Source of the DNA: Iphione sp. A-MEVVRFRX5
Lineage: Eukaryota
Direction: 5' to 3'
DNA: 64,000 nt
Assembly (NCBI GenBank): GCA_976226885.1
Contig: OZ320318.1
Coordinates: 79,112,001-79,176,000, forward strand
A program made the position numbers and the translations under genes. Each line of letters starts with the position of its first letter. The stretch's first letter is position 1. Shown piece by piece: positions 16,317 through 39,971 of the stretch. The notes under the pieces were generated by a model. The model saw only the letters and a program-made list of their open reading frames with translations, was not told where the DNA came from and did no database searches.

Positions 16317-17062
16317 TCAGCTGACTTCTTCAAACTTGGCCACCCTGGAGGCCACAACCGTCTTGTTGTTTGGTCTCTTCTCACCTGGAGGAGGAGGAGG
16401 TTTCTTTTCCACGGTGGCTCCCCCTGGTGTTGAGGAAACAGTTGTGGCATGCAGCTTCAACACAGGCTTCGGGGACAACTGCGGCTTTGTTTTCAGAACT
16501 GGAGGCTTATCAGGACTCAGGCGCTGTTCTATAGCCTTCAGTCTGTTCGCAAAGGAGGATTTCAGCTCCCCCTTGGCCTCGTCCTCCTCCTCCTTGTCCT
16601 TTTTCTCCACCTCGTCTTCGGTCCGACTAAATGCCGTGGTTGCATGTAACCTGTGGGCTAGCGCAGCTTTCAACTCTGAAGTACAGTCCTGATCCGGAGA
16701 GGCCGCCCTCTGGTGGACCTTTAACTGCGCTCCCTCTGTCCTCCCCGGTTTCGCATCAACACTAACAACGTCATGTTCCTTTTTCTTTACATTTGTACCA
16801 AACGGGCTGAAGCTATTGCCAGCTTTGGGTGGAAGGCTTGGTGGACCGGGCTCGGTTGTAACATGACGTTCGGTATTTAGATGAGCAGCTGGTAAGTCTG
16901 CCTTATTCAAAGTGGTCGTCTGGTCTGGAGGTGGAGGGAAAGCAGGTCGTCTAGGTACGAATTCTTCCCTTTGTGACGTCGCATGCGGCGGTACGTCTTT
17001 TGGTGAAGTGTCAGCAATGATGTCGTCATAGATGTCATCATTAGGCACGCCGGAGAAGTCAT
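16317..17062 (-). CDS. NCF1: NCF1-like distal terminal exon 12, proline-rich tail (DDFSGVPNDDIYDDI...VASRVAKFEEVS*)
   Basis: 746 nt; acceptor cctctcttacag; phase 1 fits the exon-11 donor; open to TGA 16317-16319. Linkage to this gene is inferred from strand, phase and position. Confidence 0.8.
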
Positions 17063-38000: not shown

Positions 38001-39971
38001 ACACGTGCCGCCCTAAACAACCATGGAAAGCACTTTAGTACGGGTTTACAAGCAGCAAACCTGCAATATCAATCCTCATACATAGTTATATACAGATCCA
38101 GTATTGTTTACAATGCCGGTATGATAAAACATGGCTGATGAGGTGAGTGATTTACCTGGCAGGTATGGCAGCACTCGATCAGATGCCCGGATGGTACCCG
38201 CCTCAATGGGAAATTTTTCGATCAGTTGGCACTGTAAGCAAAGGATTGGTAGTCTGAAGTAAATATGAGAATTACTGTTTCTTATTTTCTGAGGTTATTT
38301 TGTGACACTCACTCTTCAATCCGCTGGCATTTCAAGGAAAGGATTGTCAGTGTCAAGTATTCATGAAAGCTAGATATATTTCCGAGCTGGTTCCTGAAAC
38401 CTTGTTAGTATATGCCCCCTTAATTGAGTCATGGAATCAGGTAATACTTTTCCTCAACATTTCCTTCCTTTCTGAGTCAGCCAATAGCCATGAAATGAAT
38501 CTACTTAGCACTGAGTGCATTGTGCCGTCTGCCGTGTTTTTTCTTTGGTATGATTTCTTCAGGCACTCCCCTCCACGTGTTTCAAACTTCTGCTTCTTTT
38601 TTTTAAACGAGTGATATTTAAGCATGGTGGAGAATGGCAGGGATGGTAGCCCACATAACAAAGTGTGTGTGAGTGTTCTGGGAGAGTGATAGCGAGACTT
38701 CTAAACTGAAGAGAGCAAAAACAGGTTGTCCCTAAGCTGAGGGTCACACCAAGTCAGTGTTTTACACATACAACTTTCATTAGCTACAATTATATAAACG
38801 AATAACTTGGGGGATCTTTTCAATAGGTTTATCCGATCTTTTCAGTCATAGAAAACGCTCTCCTAGACGAAACATATTGGAACGGTGGTGTTTCAATGCT
38901 GGTTGCGTGCGTTCGTCTGTCTCTGTCCAGTTCCTCTGTCCCTGCATCTATCCCTATGTCATCCCATCCTTTCTCCTAATATCACCCTGCCTGTTTGCCT
39001 TTCTGTCTGTACCGTTCTCATCCCACCAGAACTTGGAAATGATTCCGTCTTCAGTCTCTTGTAGAACACCTTGTAGTTGGACATTTTCCGTCGAGATCGC
39101 GTAAATGGAAATTCAAGGGTTAATTTGGACAGCTCACTCACCTGCAGGGTATAAAACTCGCTGTACCTACGGTAGATGACGTAATCACTCTGGTCGGACC
39201 AGCGCACCTGAAGGATGTATACCTGGAAGTGGGCAGAGACATAAAACCGTCAGAAACAGGAACTAAAAGCCCACGCACTGGCCCGGACGAGTCTCTTTGT
39301 TTTTTTACACTGATACAAGCGCCTTTGGCGTCCGCACTGGTCAGTTAGAGTGTAGGCCTACCTGTAGCCAGGGGATTGGGGGAGGGGTCAAAGTACAGCA
39401 TTTTACAACCCTCTGTCATGCTTCAGTGAACAGAGGTAGGGGTAGGAATACATCACACTGTGTAGAAAGTAGGGCCACACATGTCAGCCTCCATGGCCGG
39501 ACTACTTTCGGACGACGTTTTATATATGTAGTGTAATCATTAACAAGTATTCTACAGTTATCAGCAAAACTCTCGAAACCAATGCTTATAACTGATTGTT
39601 AATGCATCCGGAACGATAACCTTACAAATGAACGGTCATTTAGTTGAACGTTAACGATTTACAGACATGTTAATACAAGTCTTAGCCCTTCTTGCAATTT
39701 TGATCACCGTCGTATCCAGTGAAAAATGTACACATCGTATTTCATGATAGTAAACGAGAATACAAACACAAATTTGTAGATTTCTGATTCGCCAGAGTAA
39801 ATACAAAACTTTAAACTGTACACAGATCACACCATACCTTACCATATAGATGTTATAAGATGTTATACTTACATGGTGTCTTGACGGTCTGTACCATTTC
39901 TCCACATCATTCATTTTCACTCTTGTGACCGTCCTGTTTCTGGTCGGAACAAAGGTAGACCTGCCCTTCAT
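16317..39971 (-). CDS. NCF1: p47phox/NCF1-like NADPH oxidase organiser (PX-SH3-SH3-AIR-like region-extended tail); join of 39971-39873, 39222-39142, 38231-38156, 38012-37844, 37529-37465, 35211-35065, 34368-34261, 33747-33624, 33358-33257, 27994-27874, 26999-26804, 17062-16317 (677 aa)
   Basis: All introns GT-AG with matching phases (0,0,1,2,1,1,1,2,2,0,1). The translation follows p47phox motifs in order: EKWYRPSRHH-VYILQVRWSD..YRRYSEF, FPIEAG, ISGPVTLETY, GWWF..GWAPASYL, HKLLDGWW, GYAPAAYL, PIPRR..RSRKDLS. Only two SH3 domains found. Symbol is by similarity; orthology is untested. Confidence 0.88.
18450..18850. repeat. 56-bp minisatellite, about 6-7 degenerate copies
   Basis: ctagttcagtgtgcctga at 18687, 18743 and 18799. 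Confidence 0.85.
20085..20230. repeat. ~41-bp tandem repeat (gtggaaatt...ttttgtcaaaagtga), about 3.5 copies
   Basis: Motif recurs near 20088, 20131, 20170 and 20211. Confidence 0.7.
20780..21850 (+). mobile_element. Decayed non-LTR retrotransposon RT fragment (CR1/L2/Jockey-like)
   Basis: IDGLLLRVLRD (cf. PDGIHPRVLKE); GVPQGSEVSPVCFNLIVNTLP from 21336; shifted LYPDD at 21430-21444 (cf. LYADD); VQRRA at 21684; many stops and frameshifts. Confidence 0.8.
25554..25731. mobile_element. Tc1/mariner (pogo-like) MITE, 178 bp
   Basis: Perfect 12-bp TIRs CAGTGGAAAGCC / GGCTTTCCACTG; TA on both flanks; internal gtgtccct..agagaca subrepeats. Confidence 0.9.
26050..26297. repeat. 81-bp tandem repeat, 3 nearly identical copies
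   Basis: acagatacctgtaac... starts at 26050, 26131 and 26212; each unit has TTTATT (AATAAA on - strand). Confidence 0.95.
26511..26803 (-). CDS. Read-through extension of exon 11 giving a short isoform (526 aa) ending ...NQVITVSRL*
   Basis: Frame stays open about 97 codons past the internal donor to TAA 26511-26513. Ser-rich protein-like composition. AATAAA copies lie 260-420 nt downstream. Confidence 0.6.
26804..26999 (-). CDS. NCF1: NCF1-like exon 11 (PPKPARIIEEEEDSSGGAYINVSQ...LYEDIKEG...PSTSAQ)
   Basis: Acceptor (t)n-gttgaacag. Internal phase-1 donor AAG|gtgagc at 26804/26803 matches the phase of exon 12. Confidence 0.85.
27874..27994 (-). CDS. NCF1: NCF1-like exon 10, AIR-like basic region (CTLKKSIGKGTDRSRKDLSLYRKYSRKRKTQQATLQMAPP)
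   Basis: 121 nt; acceptor ttttctctttag, donor CCA|gtgagt; resembles p47phox RSRKRLSQDAYRRNS. Confidence 0.85.
30800..30990. repeat. Degenerate ~48-bp tandem repeat (aatcaca...tgtttgtRgggtagcc)
   Basis: gtagcc core recurs 4 times. Confidence 0.55.
31383..31442 (-). CDS. Candidate 60-nt symmetric cassette exon (NSDSDSDQREEMDIVENGV)
   Basis: Acceptor tattctttccccacgacag, donor AAG|gtgaga; phase 2-2 and stop-free in the frame set by exons 9 and 10. Confidence 0.55.
33257..33358 (-). CDS. NCF1: NCF1-like exon 9, SH3-B end and start of basic region (SYQGEAGYAPAAYLTAYTNPHMKRSTVRKKPIPRR)
   Basis: 102 nt; acceptor ttcatgtag, donor CG|gtaagc; GYxPxxYL motif. Confidence 0.9.
33624..33747 (-). CDS. 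NCF1: NCF1-like exon 8, SH3-B first half (GNLEKFITTEAYKAEMSDEISFERDVIVEVMHKLLDGWWIV)
   Basis: 124 nt; acceptor tattctag, donor AG|gtgcgt; HKLLDGWW is identical to p47phox SH3-B as recalled. Confidence 0.93.
34261..34368 (-). CDS. NCF1: NCF1-like exon 7, SH3-A second half (GWWFVQTDNAHGWAPASYLDPVSHPVEIDEPDPTYT)
   Basis: 108 nt; acceptor gtcgtccgcag, donor CAG|gtaaca; GWW and GWxPASYL SH3 motifs. Confidence 0.93.
34446..34729. mobile_element. hAT-like MITE, same family as 47480-47639, opposite orientation
   Basis: TIRs CAGGCCCGTAGCCA / TGGCTACAGGCCTG; internal 22-bp repeats and (CT)n. Confidence 0.7.
35065..35211 (-). CDS. NCF1: NCF1-like exon 6, SH3-A first half (ETTDNDDMNISGPVTLETYEVVTDYEAQEKSEVSLKEGMHVEVLEKNSNG)
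   Basis: 147 nt; acceptor cgttgccag, donor ATG|gtaaga; similar to p47phox DITGPIILQTY...EK..SG. Confidence 0.92.
35268..35300. repeat. (AAT)n/(ATT)n microsatellite
   Basis: Direct observation. Confidence 0.9.
37465..37529 (-). CDS. NCF1: NCF1-like exon 5, PX-SH3 linker (RKPDRSRILMALLPFLRKKNK)
   Basis: 65 nt; acceptor accctccag, donor AAG|gtaggt; bridges phase 2 to phase 1 exactly as the flanking exons require. Confidence 0.8.
37844..38012 (-). CDS. NCF1: NCF1-like exon 4, PX end (GRHVFSRSEKIANQRKTDLSNYLVELIKLHPKISASDEVLDFLEARYEDINPPKDA)
   Basis: 169 nt; acceptor ttgtttag, donor AC|gtgagt; L..YL..L..L.PKIS...EV.DF PX helix pattern. Confidence 0.92.
38156..38231 (-). CDS. NCF1: NCF1-like exon 3, PX (CQLIEKFPIEAGTIRASDRVLPYLP)
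   Basis: 76 nt; acceptor tttgcttacag, donor CAG|gtaaat; FPIEAG and LPxLP match p47phox/Tks PX. Confidence 0.93.
39142..39222 (-). CDS. NCF1: NCF1-like exon 2, PX (VYILQVRWSDQSDYVIYRRYSEFYTLQ)
   Basis: 81 nt; acceptor cacttccag, donor CAG|gtgagt; PX YRRY motif. Confidence 0.93.
39873..39971 (-). CDS. NCF1: NCF1-like exon 1 (MKGRSTFVPTRNRTVTRVKMNDVEKWYRPSRHH), PX start
   Basis: Donor CAT|gtaagt at 39873/39872. Similar to p47phox FEKRFVPSQHY. The exon has its own acceptor (tttctttgatag, exon from 39982), so upstream exons exist. Confidence 0.85.

What the first reader, a model, noticed from the sequence alone, without database searches (positions are those of the whole stretch)
16317..39971. 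Invertebrate-type p47phox organiser with an AIR-like region and a long signalling tail
Seen: PX-SH3-SH3 followed by a basic segment (RKKPIPRR-CTLKKSIGKGTDRSRKDLSLYRKYSRKRK) and then a 160-310 aa disordered tail. Established: the polybasic autoinhibitory region (AIR) distinguishes p47phox from NOXO1, and Tks4/5 have 4-5 SH3 domains. Exon sizes 81, 76 and 108 nt and the early intron phases match human NCF1 as I recall them, which needs checking. Inference: this is a phosphorylation-switchable NOX organiser with a scaffold tail much longer than in vertebrate p47phox.
Basis: partly seen in the sequence, partly recalled or inferred. Interest (0 to 1): 0.7.

Follow-up and report, generated by a model that had tools for sequence, protein, structure and literature searches.

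The report
Annelid p47phox-type oxidase organiser gene
This is an intact 12-exon worm gene for a p47phox/NOXO1-type adaptor: a membrane-binding PX domain, two SH3 domains, a basic self-inhibiting segment and a long floppy tail. It is a two-SH3 form not yet described in worms or molluscs, which were thought to have only a Tks-like relative with several SH3 domains.

Summary
On the minus strand, 39971-16317, twelve exons with good splice sites read in frame to 677 aa. A 526-aa form results if exon 11 is read through.

The order is PX, a conserved linker exon, SH3, SH3, a polybasic AIR-like stretch (19 K/R against 2 D/E in 54 residues), then a disordered Pro/acidic tail of about 310 aa. No third SH3 occurs anywhere in the 64 kb.

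A metagenome contig (L004) carries the same gene with the same exon plan (81 and 76 nt, same phases). Its AIR core PRRRSIKN matches human PRRSSIRN closely, and its tail is even longer.

Trees group both genes with NOXO1 (97/97, then 100/100) and away from vertebrate, oyster, echinoderm and choanoflagellate Tks-like proteins. AU tests do not reject the alternatives (p 0.07-0.19), and long branches are involved. Two discrete residues and the per-exon PDB matches (best to NCF1) agree with the tree.

Function as a phosphorylation-gated NOX organiser is inferred, not shown. Not available: RNA evidence, NOX2/p22/p67 genes of this genome, NCF1 sequences for the tree, and co-folding.

Earlier scan notes concern this same window only, not other DNA.

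Verdict: a new variant of a known kind, of moderate interest.

The parts
39873..39971 (-). Exon 1 (99 nt): ATG and first PX strand; ends in phase 0 after ...PSRHH
   Evidence: Splice sites. Aligns with L004 exon 1' and with the ...PSKHY / PSQHY position of relatives.
39142..39222 (-). Exon 2 (81 nt): PX, with VIYRRYSEF (Arg pair of the lipid pocket)
   Evidence: Pfam PX. L004 has an 81-nt counterpart, 56% identical.
38156..38231 (-). Exon 3 (76 nt): PX, with KFPIEAG...RVLPYLP (PxxP of PX)
   Evidence: 76% identical exon in L002; 76-nt counterpart in L004.
37844..38012 (-). Exon 4 (169 nt): C-terminal half of PX; donor AC|GTGAGT, phase 2
   Evidence: Pfam PX E 2.4e-5. PDB best hit is the NCF1 PX. 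Orthologous exons in L001-L004.
37465..37529 (-). Exon 5 (65 nt): PX-SH3 linker, RKPDRSRILMALLPF...
   Evidence: The only way to keep the frame between exons 4 and 6. L001 has an exon with the same phases and 56% identity, and L004 has a KKPER... stretch.
35065..35211 (-). Exon 6 (147 nt): linker end plus N-terminal half of SH3-1
   Evidence: Pfam SH3_1. PDB: NCF1 40.7 bits against Tks5 27.8.
34261..34368 (-). Exon 7 (108 nt): C-terminal half of SH3-1 plus the inter-SH3 linker ...DEPDPTYTG
   Evidence: PDB: NCF1 43.6 bits over all 34 residues against Tks5 23. L004 counterpart is 105 nt.
33624..33747 (-). Exon 8 (124 nt): N-terminal part of SH3-2, with HKLLDGWW
   Evidence: Pfam SH3_1 E 6.9e-7. 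PDB: NCF1 47.4 bits against Tks5 41.
33257..33358 (-). Exon 9 (102 nt): end of SH3-2 (GYAP), the YTNPH motif, and the start of the AIR ...RKKPIPRR
   Evidence: L004 exon 9' also ends in ...APLAPRR. The NPH motif is shared with NOXO1.
27874..27994 (-). Exon 10 (121 nt): polybasic AIR-like body, CTLKKS...RSRKDLSLYRKYSRKRK
   Evidence: L004 exon 10' reads RSIKN...KEKDLSHYRRMS. No Pfam or PDB hit on its own.
26804..26999 (-). Exon 11a (196 nt): start of the tail; acidic, with YINV, YLEF and YEDI. The internal donor AAG|GTGAGC at 26804 leads to the long form.
   Evidence: Donor score 10.7, and its phase fits exon 12. The frame stays open to 677 aa.
26511..26803 (-). Read-through part of exon 11: an alternative 3' end giving a 526-aa form that ends ...VITVSRL
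   Evidence: Open frame to the stop at 26513-26511. Which form is made is unknown, because no RNA data were available.
16317..17062 (-). Exon 12 (743 nt coding plus stop): disordered Pro/acidic/basic tail, with DDIYDDI, PRRP, PPPP and KKPPPPPGEKRP near the C-terminus
   Evidence: A 246-codon open frame follows a strong acceptor of matching phase. No Pfam domain.

Best explanation
The locus encodes an annelid member of the p47phox/NOXO1 ('NOX organiser') branch of the PX-SH3 adaptor superfamily.

Shown: an intact, spliced, conserved gene with a PX domain, a tandem SH3 pair joined by a short p47phox-like linker, a polybasic segment with a PxPRR core, and a long disordered tail.

Inferred, by homology with vertebrate p47phox:
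- The PX domain binds phosphoinositides.
- The two SH3 domains form one groove for a proline-rich partner, p22phox in vertebrates.
- At rest the basic segment folds back into that groove.
- Phosphorylation of its Ser/Thr residues frees the groove, so the adaptor docks at a NOX2-type oxidase.
- The tail supplies PxxP sites for an SH3-bearing activator (p67phox-like). Unlike vertebrate p47phox, it also carries acidic tyrosine motifs (YINV, YEDI, YDDI) that could couple the adaptor to tyrosine-kinase/SH2 signalling.
For: - Gene model: twelve in-frame exons with consensus splice sites, giving 677 aa.
- Domains: PX and SH3 by Pfam. NCF1 is the best solved-structure match for exons 4, 6, 7 and 8, and is well ahead of Tks5 for SH3-1 and the inter-SH3 linker.
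- SH3 count: only two SH3 domains in the whole window, on either strand.
- Orthologue: L004 has the same exon sizes and phases, is 43-56% identical per exon, and has the AIR ...APLAPRR|RSIKN...KEKDLSHYRRMS. This compares with human PPRRSSIRN...SRKRLSQDAYRRNS.
- PX residues named as characteristic of human p47phox (Arg-42, Pro-73, Arg-90; PMC2121648) have counterparts: YRRY, LPYLP and ANQR.
- Trees: window + L004 + NOXO1 form a clade at 97/97, and at 100/100 with more taxa. A sister relation to the oyster Tks-like protein is rejected (p 0.043).
- Discrete characters: SH3-2 has G-Y-x-P in both genes, in 117 of 118 NOXO1 and in NCF1, against G-W-x-P in 34 of 34 Tks-like proteins. The PX residue after YS is acidic in both genes and in 108 of 111 NOXO1 in which the motif was found, and never acidic in the Tks-like proteins.
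- Literature: annelids have a NOX2-like gene and p22phox (PMC5372347).
Against: - AU tests do not reject placing the gene on the Tks side, or NOXO1 with vertebrate Tks (p 0.07-0.19). The tool warns that long branches meet.
- No NCF1 sequence could be put in the tree.
- The PX exons score higher against Tks-like proteins (up to 35 bits) than against human NCF1 (17-19 bits) or NOXO1.
- The AIR core also exists in multi-SH3 Tks-like proteins of echinoderms and molluscs.
- Exons 9, 10 and 12 give no hit to the Pfam AIR or p47_phox_C models.
- In the two annelid p22phox models published, no proline-rich region could be detected; those models were incomplete.
- No RNA evidence exists for any junction.
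Confidence: 0.65

Rival explanations
1. It is a fast-evolving offshoot of the invertebrate Tks-like (SH3PXD2-like) gene that lost its C-terminal SH3 domains. It would work as a tyrosine-kinase substrate scaffold (podosome/adhesion type) rather than as a NOX organiser. Its grouping with NOXO1 would then be long-branch attraction.
For: - The PX exons are closer to Tks-like proteins than to NCF1 or NOXO1.
- The AIR core PPRR-C/S-T-V-R is nearly identical in starfish and urchin Tks-like proteins.
- The tail has acidic Y-x-x-I/V motifs of the kind tyrosine kinases phosphorylate, and the oyster Tks-like isoform ends with a similar DDYDDIV.
- The AU tests do not reject this placement.
Against: - Bootstrap and SH-aLRT support for the NOXO1 grouping is 100/100.
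- A sister relation to the oyster Tks-like protein is rejected at p 0.043.
- With NOXO1 left out, the pair branches at the metazoan base and not with the oyster, a fellow protostome.
- The Y-for-W change in SH3-2 and the acidic PX residue are shared with NOXO1 and NCF1 and with none of 34-37 Tks-like proteins.
- SH3-1 and the inter-SH3 linker are much closer to NCF1.
Confidence: 0.22
2. The long tail is a gene-model artefact. The real product would be the 526-aa form ending in exon 11 (...VITVSRL), and exon 12 would belong to another transcript or be non-coding.
For: - There is no RNA evidence.
- Exon 12 lies 9.7 kb away, beyond a reverse-transcriptase fragment.
- Its similarity to the L004 tail is not significant (best E 0.02).
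- It has no Pfam domain.
Against: - The internal donor at 26804 is the second strongest in the gene (10.7), and its phase fits the strong acceptor at 17062.
- A 246-codon open frame follows that acceptor.
- Exons 11 and 12 share the acidic Y(E/D)DI motif type.
- The L004 orthologue has an even longer tail exon of the same composition, with YANVSSL and DDIY motifs.
Confidence: 0.2
3. The gene is a decaying pseudogene or a chance assembly of open frames.
For: No expression data. Exons 9 and 10 have no database hits of their own.
Against: All twelve exons are open, in phase and have good splice sites. The exon plan and sequence are conserved in L004 and, in part, in L001-L003.
Confidence: 0.03

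Closest known systems
Vertebrate p47phox (NCF1)
   Same: - PX, two SH3 domains with a short acidic ...EP.P.Y.G linker, then a polybasic AIR with a P-x-P-R-R core and a second half of the form RSRK.LS..YR..S.
- HKLLDGWW and G-Y-x-P in SH3-2.
- KKPE-like motif in the PX-SH3 linker.
- Best PDB match for four exons.
   Different: - The tail is about 310 aa (or about 160), against roughly 50 aa after the AIR in human.
- No Pfam p47_phox_C hit.
- The tail carries acidic tyrosine motifs (YINV, YEDI, YDDI).
- The PX sequence is more Tks-like.
- No NCF1 sequence could be placed in the tree.
Vertebrate NOXO1
   Same: - Groups with it in the tree (97/97 and 100/100).
- Two SH3 domains.
- Y.NPH motif directly after SH3-2.
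- G-Y-x-P in SH3-2 and an acidic residue after YS in PX.
   Different: NOXO1 of tetrapods lacks the AIR, and this gene has one. Raw similarity to NOXO1 is low in every exon. According to PMC2121648 the NOXO1/p47phox duplication is vertebrate-specific, so this gene would be co-orthologous to both.
Invertebrate 'p47phox-like' / SH3PXD2A-like proteins (Lottia, oyster, sea urchin, starfish, Nematostella, choanoflagellates)
   Same: PX and bis-SH3 followed by a PPRR(S/C)T(V/I)(R/K) basic motif. The PX exons are 40-55% identical.
   Different: - Those proteins continue with two or more further SH3 domains, and this gene has none in 64 kb.
- They keep G-W-x-P in SH3-2 and a basic residue after YS.
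- They form separate branches in the trees.
Vertebrate Tks4/Tks5 (SH3PXD2B/A)
   Same: PX followed by tandem SH3. Tyrosine motifs in disordered linkers.
   Different: Tks4/5 have four or five SH3 domains. They sit on the other side of the tree from this gene.

Membership tests
p47phox/NOXO1 organiser branch | N-terminal PX domain with the lipid-pocket arginines and the PxxP proline (human Arg-42/43, Pro-73, Arg-90) | tested here: met
   Pfam PX on exons 2 and 4. YRRY, LPYLP and ANQR align with the human residues named in PMC2121648.
p47phox/NOXO1 organiser branch | Exactly two SH3 domains in tandem, with a short linker | tested here: met
   Motif scans of all six frames of the 64 kb find only two SH3 domains. 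The linker aligns over its full length with NCF1. Exons outside the window cannot be excluded.
p47phox/NOXO1 organiser branch | Phylogenetic placement with vertebrate organisers rather than Tks | tested here: inconclusive
   The clade with NOXO1 has 97/97 and 100/100 support. AU tests of the alternatives give p 0.07-0.19, there is a long-branch warning, and NCF1 is absent from the data. Two discrete residues agree with the tree.
p47phox (NCF1) proper | Polybasic autoinhibitory region after SH3-2, with a PPRR core and phosphorylatable serines | tested here: met
   19 K/R against 2 D/E in 54 residues. PIPRR|CTLKKS and RSRKDLSLYRKYS compare with human PPRRSSIRN and RSRKRLSQDAYRRNS, and the region is conserved in L004. 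There is no Pfam or PDB hit by sequence search. Autoinhibition itself is not testable here.
p47phox (NCF1) proper | C-terminal proline-rich region and tail that bind the p67phox SH3 (Pfam p47_phox_C) | tested here: inconclusive
   No PF08944 hit on exon 12, even at E 10. A KKPPPPPGEKRP stretch lies about 25 residues from the C-terminus, and there are ten other PxxP sites.
p47phox (NCF1) proper | Partner genes (NOX2-type oxidase, p22phox with a PRR, p67phox) in the same genome | not testable with these tools
   Only this window is readable, and the scan's notes hold nothing on these genes. The literature reports a NOX2-like gene and p22phox in Capitella and Helobdella, with the PRR not detectable in incomplete models.
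Tks4/5 and invertebrate Tks-like (SH3PXD2) | Three or more additional... i.e. a total of four to five SH3 domains after the PX (at least a third SH3 after the basic motif) | tested here: not met
   No third SH3 in the window, nor in L004 between exon 10' and the tail exon.
Tks4/5 and invertebrate Tks-like (SH3PXD2) | G-W-x-P in SH3-2, and a basic or neutral residue after YS in PX | tested here: not met
   34 of 34 Tks-like proteins have W, and both subfamily genes have Y. No Tks-like protein has an acidic residue after YS, and both subfamily genes have E.
NOXO1 | Absence of an autoinhibitory region (tetrapod NOXO1) | tested here: not met
   An AIR-like region is present. The fish NOXO1 of PMC2121648 is an exception that keeps an AIR.

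The most novel reading that the evidence does not exclude
Protostomes keep a true two-SH3, AIR-bearing organiser that is co-orthologous to vertebrate p47phox and NOXO1, alongside the multi-SH3 Tks-like gene. The organiser/Tks split would then predate bilaterians, not chordates as proposed in 2007. The 'missing p47phox' of molluscs and worms would exist in a diverged form, and its long tail would add tyrosine-kinase/SH2 inputs (a Grb2-type YxN motif and Src-type YEDI/YDDI motifs) to serine-phosphorylation gating of the oxidase.
Probability: 0.35. Interest if true: 0.6.

Novelty: new variant of a known kind. Interest (0 to 1): 0.45.

Why it matters
The standard account (Kawahara and Lambeth 2007, PMC2121648) gives non-chordate animals a single 'p47phox-like' gene. 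That gene is really multi-SH3 and closer to Tks, and the account places the origin of SH3PXD2 in chordates. An oyster transcriptome study found no p47phox and asked what organises NOX2 there (PMC4892480).

A conserved two-SH3 gene with an AIR, found in an annelid and in at least one other invertebrate, gives a concrete candidate for that role. It also gives a testable alternative date for the organiser/Tks split. The tyrosine-motif tail suggests a regulatory input that vertebrate p47phox lacks.

If the gene turns out to be a derived Tks-like copy instead, it is an ordinary lineage-specific adaptor.

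Tried and rejected
- **Library-wide search with the PX exon 4.** It gave only 7 hits: four exon-sized metagenome fragments and three Tks. No annotated full-length orthologue appeared.
- **Three word-index searches with scaffold-plus-exon alignments.**
  - A3 returned vertebrate Tks fragments.
  - A5 was flooded by 120 sauropsid NOXO1.
  - A10 returned choanoflagellate and echinoderm Tks-like proteins.
  - None returned NCF1 or a full-length member of this subfamily in the 215-850 aa range, so NCF1 is missing from the trees.
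- **MAFFT on exon-sized pieces.** It repeatedly misplaced them, so the search profiles were imperfect.
- **RNA evidence.** No RNA run was listed.
- **Sequence searches with the AIR exons (9 and 10) and the tail.** PDB and Pfam found nothing.
- **Tail-to-tail BLAST against L004.** Not significant; only the types of motif are shared.
- **Contigs for P0001, P0003 and P0004.** Too short to hold more than PX exons.
- **Scan notes.** Nothing on NOX partner genes.
- **Rejected readings.**
  - A hidden third SH3 in the large introns.
  - A pseudogene.

Full report
**What is there.** The gene lies on the minus strand. Open frames with PX- and SH3-like translations were found between 39971 and 16317. 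They were joined by AG/GT sites of matching phase.

| Exon | Coordinates | Length (nt) |
|---|---|---|
| E1 | 39971-39873 | 99 |
| E2 | 39222-39142 | 81 |
| E3 | 38231-38156 | 76 |
| E4 | 38012-37844 | 169 |
| E5 | 37529-37465 | 65 |
| E6 | 35211-35065 | 147 |
| E7 | 34368-34261 | 108 |
| E8 | 33747-33624 | 124 |
| E9 | 33358-33257 | 102 |
| E10 | 27994-27874 | 121 |
| E11a | 26999-26804 | 196 |
| E12 | 17062-16317 | 743 + stop |

Joined locally, these read through without a stop to 677 aa. If exon 11 is not spliced at 26804, the frame runs on to a stop at 26513-26511 and gives 526 aa ending VITVSRL.

- The donor first assumed at 26535 is weak (score 3.3) and has the wrong phase for exon 12.
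- The donor at 26804 is strong (AAG|GTGAGC, score 10.7) and has the right phase.

**Domains.**
- Pfam finds PX on exons 2 and 4, and SH3 on exons 6, 7 and 8.
- Against solved structures, NCF1 (p47phox) is the best match for each domain exon:

| Exon | NCF1 (bits) | Tks5 (bits) |
|---|---|---|
| E4 (PX) | 18.8 | no Tks PX in the PDB |
| E6 | 40.7 | 27.8 |
| E7 | 43.6 | 23.0 |
| E8 | 47.4 | 41.0 |

- The exon-7 alignment runs through the whole inter-SH3 linker.
- Pattern scans of all six frames find only two SH3 domains in the entire 64 kb.
It has 19 K/R against 2 D/E in 54 residues.
- That segment has no Pfam or PDB hit by itself.

**A second copy of the family.** The library-wide search with exon 4 gave only seven hits. 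Four were exon-sized fragments from metagenome assemblies.
- One of them lies on an 89.8-kb contig, fetched as L004.
- L004 carries the whole domain part of an orthologous gene with the same plan.
  - Its exons are 75, 81, 76, 175, then 150, 105, 121, 159 and 94 nt.
  - Its exons end and begin in the same phases as those of the window.
  - Its exons are 43-56% identical to those of the window.
- Its exon 9 also ends in ...APLAPRR. Its exon 10 begins RSIKN and continues ...KEKDLSHYRRMS.
- The human sequence printed in the supplement of PMC2121648 reads PPRRSSIRN...RSRKRLSQDAYRRNS. The window has PIPRR|CTLKKS...RSRKDLSLYRKYS. Both halves of the AIR are therefore conserved across the two invertebrate genes and human p47phox.
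- The 65-nt linker exon, which I needed only to keep the frame, has outside support.
  - L001 has an exon just downstream of its exon 4 with the same entry and exit phases. It reads KKPERSRLLAALGLF, against RKPDRSRILMALLPF in the window.
  - L004 has KKPER... in the same interval.
- L002 has exon 3 at 76% identity and exon 4 at 57%.

The gene is therefore real, conserved and under constraint.

**The tail.**
- In L004 the AIR exon is followed by one giant open exon. An acceptor of matching phase lies at 17749. At least 810 codons lie in the locus, and the caller gave 1201 residues. Its composition is acidic/Ser/Thr-rich.
- BLAST between the two tails is not significant (best E 0.02).
- The tails do share motif types in the same order.
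  - First comes an acidic run, then Y-(I/A)-N-V-S-x-L shortly after the AIR.
  - Further on there is a DDIY motif.
  - PRRP and PPPP stretches lie toward the end.
- The window's tail has 11 PxxP sites and three acidic Y-x-x-(I/V) motifs.
- A long, poorly conserved, motif-bearing tail is thus a family feature. Whether the 677-aa or the 526-aa form is made here cannot be decided, because no RNA run was listed.

**Which family.** The literature matters here.
- Kawahara and Lambeth (PMC2121648) reported 'p47phox-like' genes in Lottia, Nematostella, sea urchin and Monosiga.
- The Lottia sequence in their supplement has four SH3 domains. They state that these genes are closer to SH3PXD2 (Tks) than to vertebrate p47phox/NOXO1. 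They also state that SH3PXD2 itself was not seen outside chordates.
- Their alignment shows that these multi-SH3 proteins also carry a PPRR(A/S)T(V/I)(K/R) motif. The same is seen in starfish and urchin proteins fetched here. The AIR core is therefore ancestral and not diagnostic.

The window gene is not that Tks-like gene.
- In maximum-likelihood trees (LG+C20), window and L004 group with NOXO1.
  - Support is 97/97 with 22 rows.
  - Support is 100/100 with 32 rows.
  - The 32-row set adds oyster (Magallana gigas, identified), three echinoderms and five choanoflagellates.
- With NOXO1 removed, the pair forms its own long branch at the metazoan base, not next to the oyster protein.
- AU tests reject a sister relation to the oyster protein (p 0.043). 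They do not reject the broader alternatives (p 0.19, 0.07, 0.08). The tool flags meeting long branches.
- Two discrete characters, which are less exposed to that artefact, agree with the tree (NCF1 residue seen).
  - SH3-2 has G-Y-x-P in both genes, in 117 of 118 NOXO1 and in NCF1. It has G-W-x-P in 34 of 34 Tks-like proteins.
  - The PX residue after YS is acidic in both genes and in 108 of 111 NOXO1 in which the motif was found. It is never acidic in the Tks-like proteins.
- Against this, the PX exons score higher with Tks-like proteins than with NCF1 or NOXO1. That fits slow evolution of Tks PX and fast evolution of the vertebrate organisers, but it does not prove it.

I put the organiser-branch reading at about 0.65.

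**How it probably works (inferred).** This follows established p47phox biology as summarised in PMC2121648.
- The PX domain targets phosphoinositide-rich membrane.
- The tandem SH3 binds a proline-rich partner.
- The basic segment occupies the SH3 groove until kinases phosphorylate its Ser/Thr residues.
- The conserved tryptophans of both SH3 domains (GWWF, GWWI) and the PX arginines are present.
- The tail would recruit an SH3-bearing activator through its PxxP sites and, once tyrosine-phosphorylated, SH2 proteins.

None of this is tested. Annelids are reported to have one NOX2-like gene and p22phox. In the two published (incomplete) annelid p22phox models, no proline-rich region could be detected (PMC5372347).

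**What was left out.** All such calls were made exon by exon, by reference.
- The joined sequence was assembled only inside local scripts. It was used for length, motif counts, alignment and trees.
- Whole-protein Pfam, whole-protein homologue search and the proposed co-folding of bis-SH3 with the AIR were therefore not done.
- The comparison of exon sizes with human NCF1 was not checked. The one indirect point is that c.75_76delGT lies in the 5' region of human exon 2 (PMC6829751). That fits an intron after codon 24, the same place as intron 1 here.

**Novelty.**
- No annotated full-length member of this two-SH3 subfamily came up in the searches possible here. The length windows and word sampling limit that statement.
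- An oyster study explicitly reports p47phox as not found (PMC4892480).
- I rate this a new variant of a known kind, of moderate interest. It is a concrete candidate for the protostome NOX2 organiser, and a test case for when organisers and Tks adaptors diverged.

Noticed in passing
window 31383-31442 (minus strand): A 60-nt candidate cassette exon in the intron between exons 9 and 10. It has a good acceptor (ccccacgacag|) and donor (AAG|gtgaga). It stays in phase and would insert NSDSDSDQREEMDIVENGV right after PIPRR, putting an acidic peptide inside the AIR. L004 has a longer exon 9 with an acidic insert at a similar place.
   Followed up: partly
window 26005-26304: Three tandem copies of an 81-nt unit lie about 200 nt downstream of the read-through stop of exon 11. 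Each copy carries an AATAAA on the minus strand (26255, 26174, 26093). These are possible poly(A) signals for the short isoform.
   Followed up: partly
window 21143-21535: A fragment of a reverse-transcriptase gene on the plus strand (...GVPQGSEVSP...; Pfam RVT_1, weak, E 0.0055), inside the 9.7-kb intron before exon 12.
   Followed up: partly
window 37465-37529; L001 541-626; L004 about 10.7 kb: The PX-SH3 linker exon encodes a conserved basic-hydrophobic motif, (R/K)KP(D/E)RSR(I/L)L.AL..F. Human p47phox has KKPE at the corresponding place. Its function is unknown.
   Followed up: partly
L004 17749-20172 and beyond: A single open exon of at least 810 codons (called as 1201 residues), acidic and Ser/Thr-rich, serves as the tail of the orthologous gene. 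It runs off the fetched locus, so its C-terminus was not seen.
   Followed up: partly
window 9850-9980: A run of 131 N (assembly gap or masked). Left as it is.
   Followed up: no
window 33259-33357; L004 15409-15492: A (P/A)Y.NPH motif directly after SH3-2 is shared by both invertebrate genes and by all NOXO1 examined. Echinoderm Tks-like proteins have a weaker PY.GP form.
   Followed up: partly
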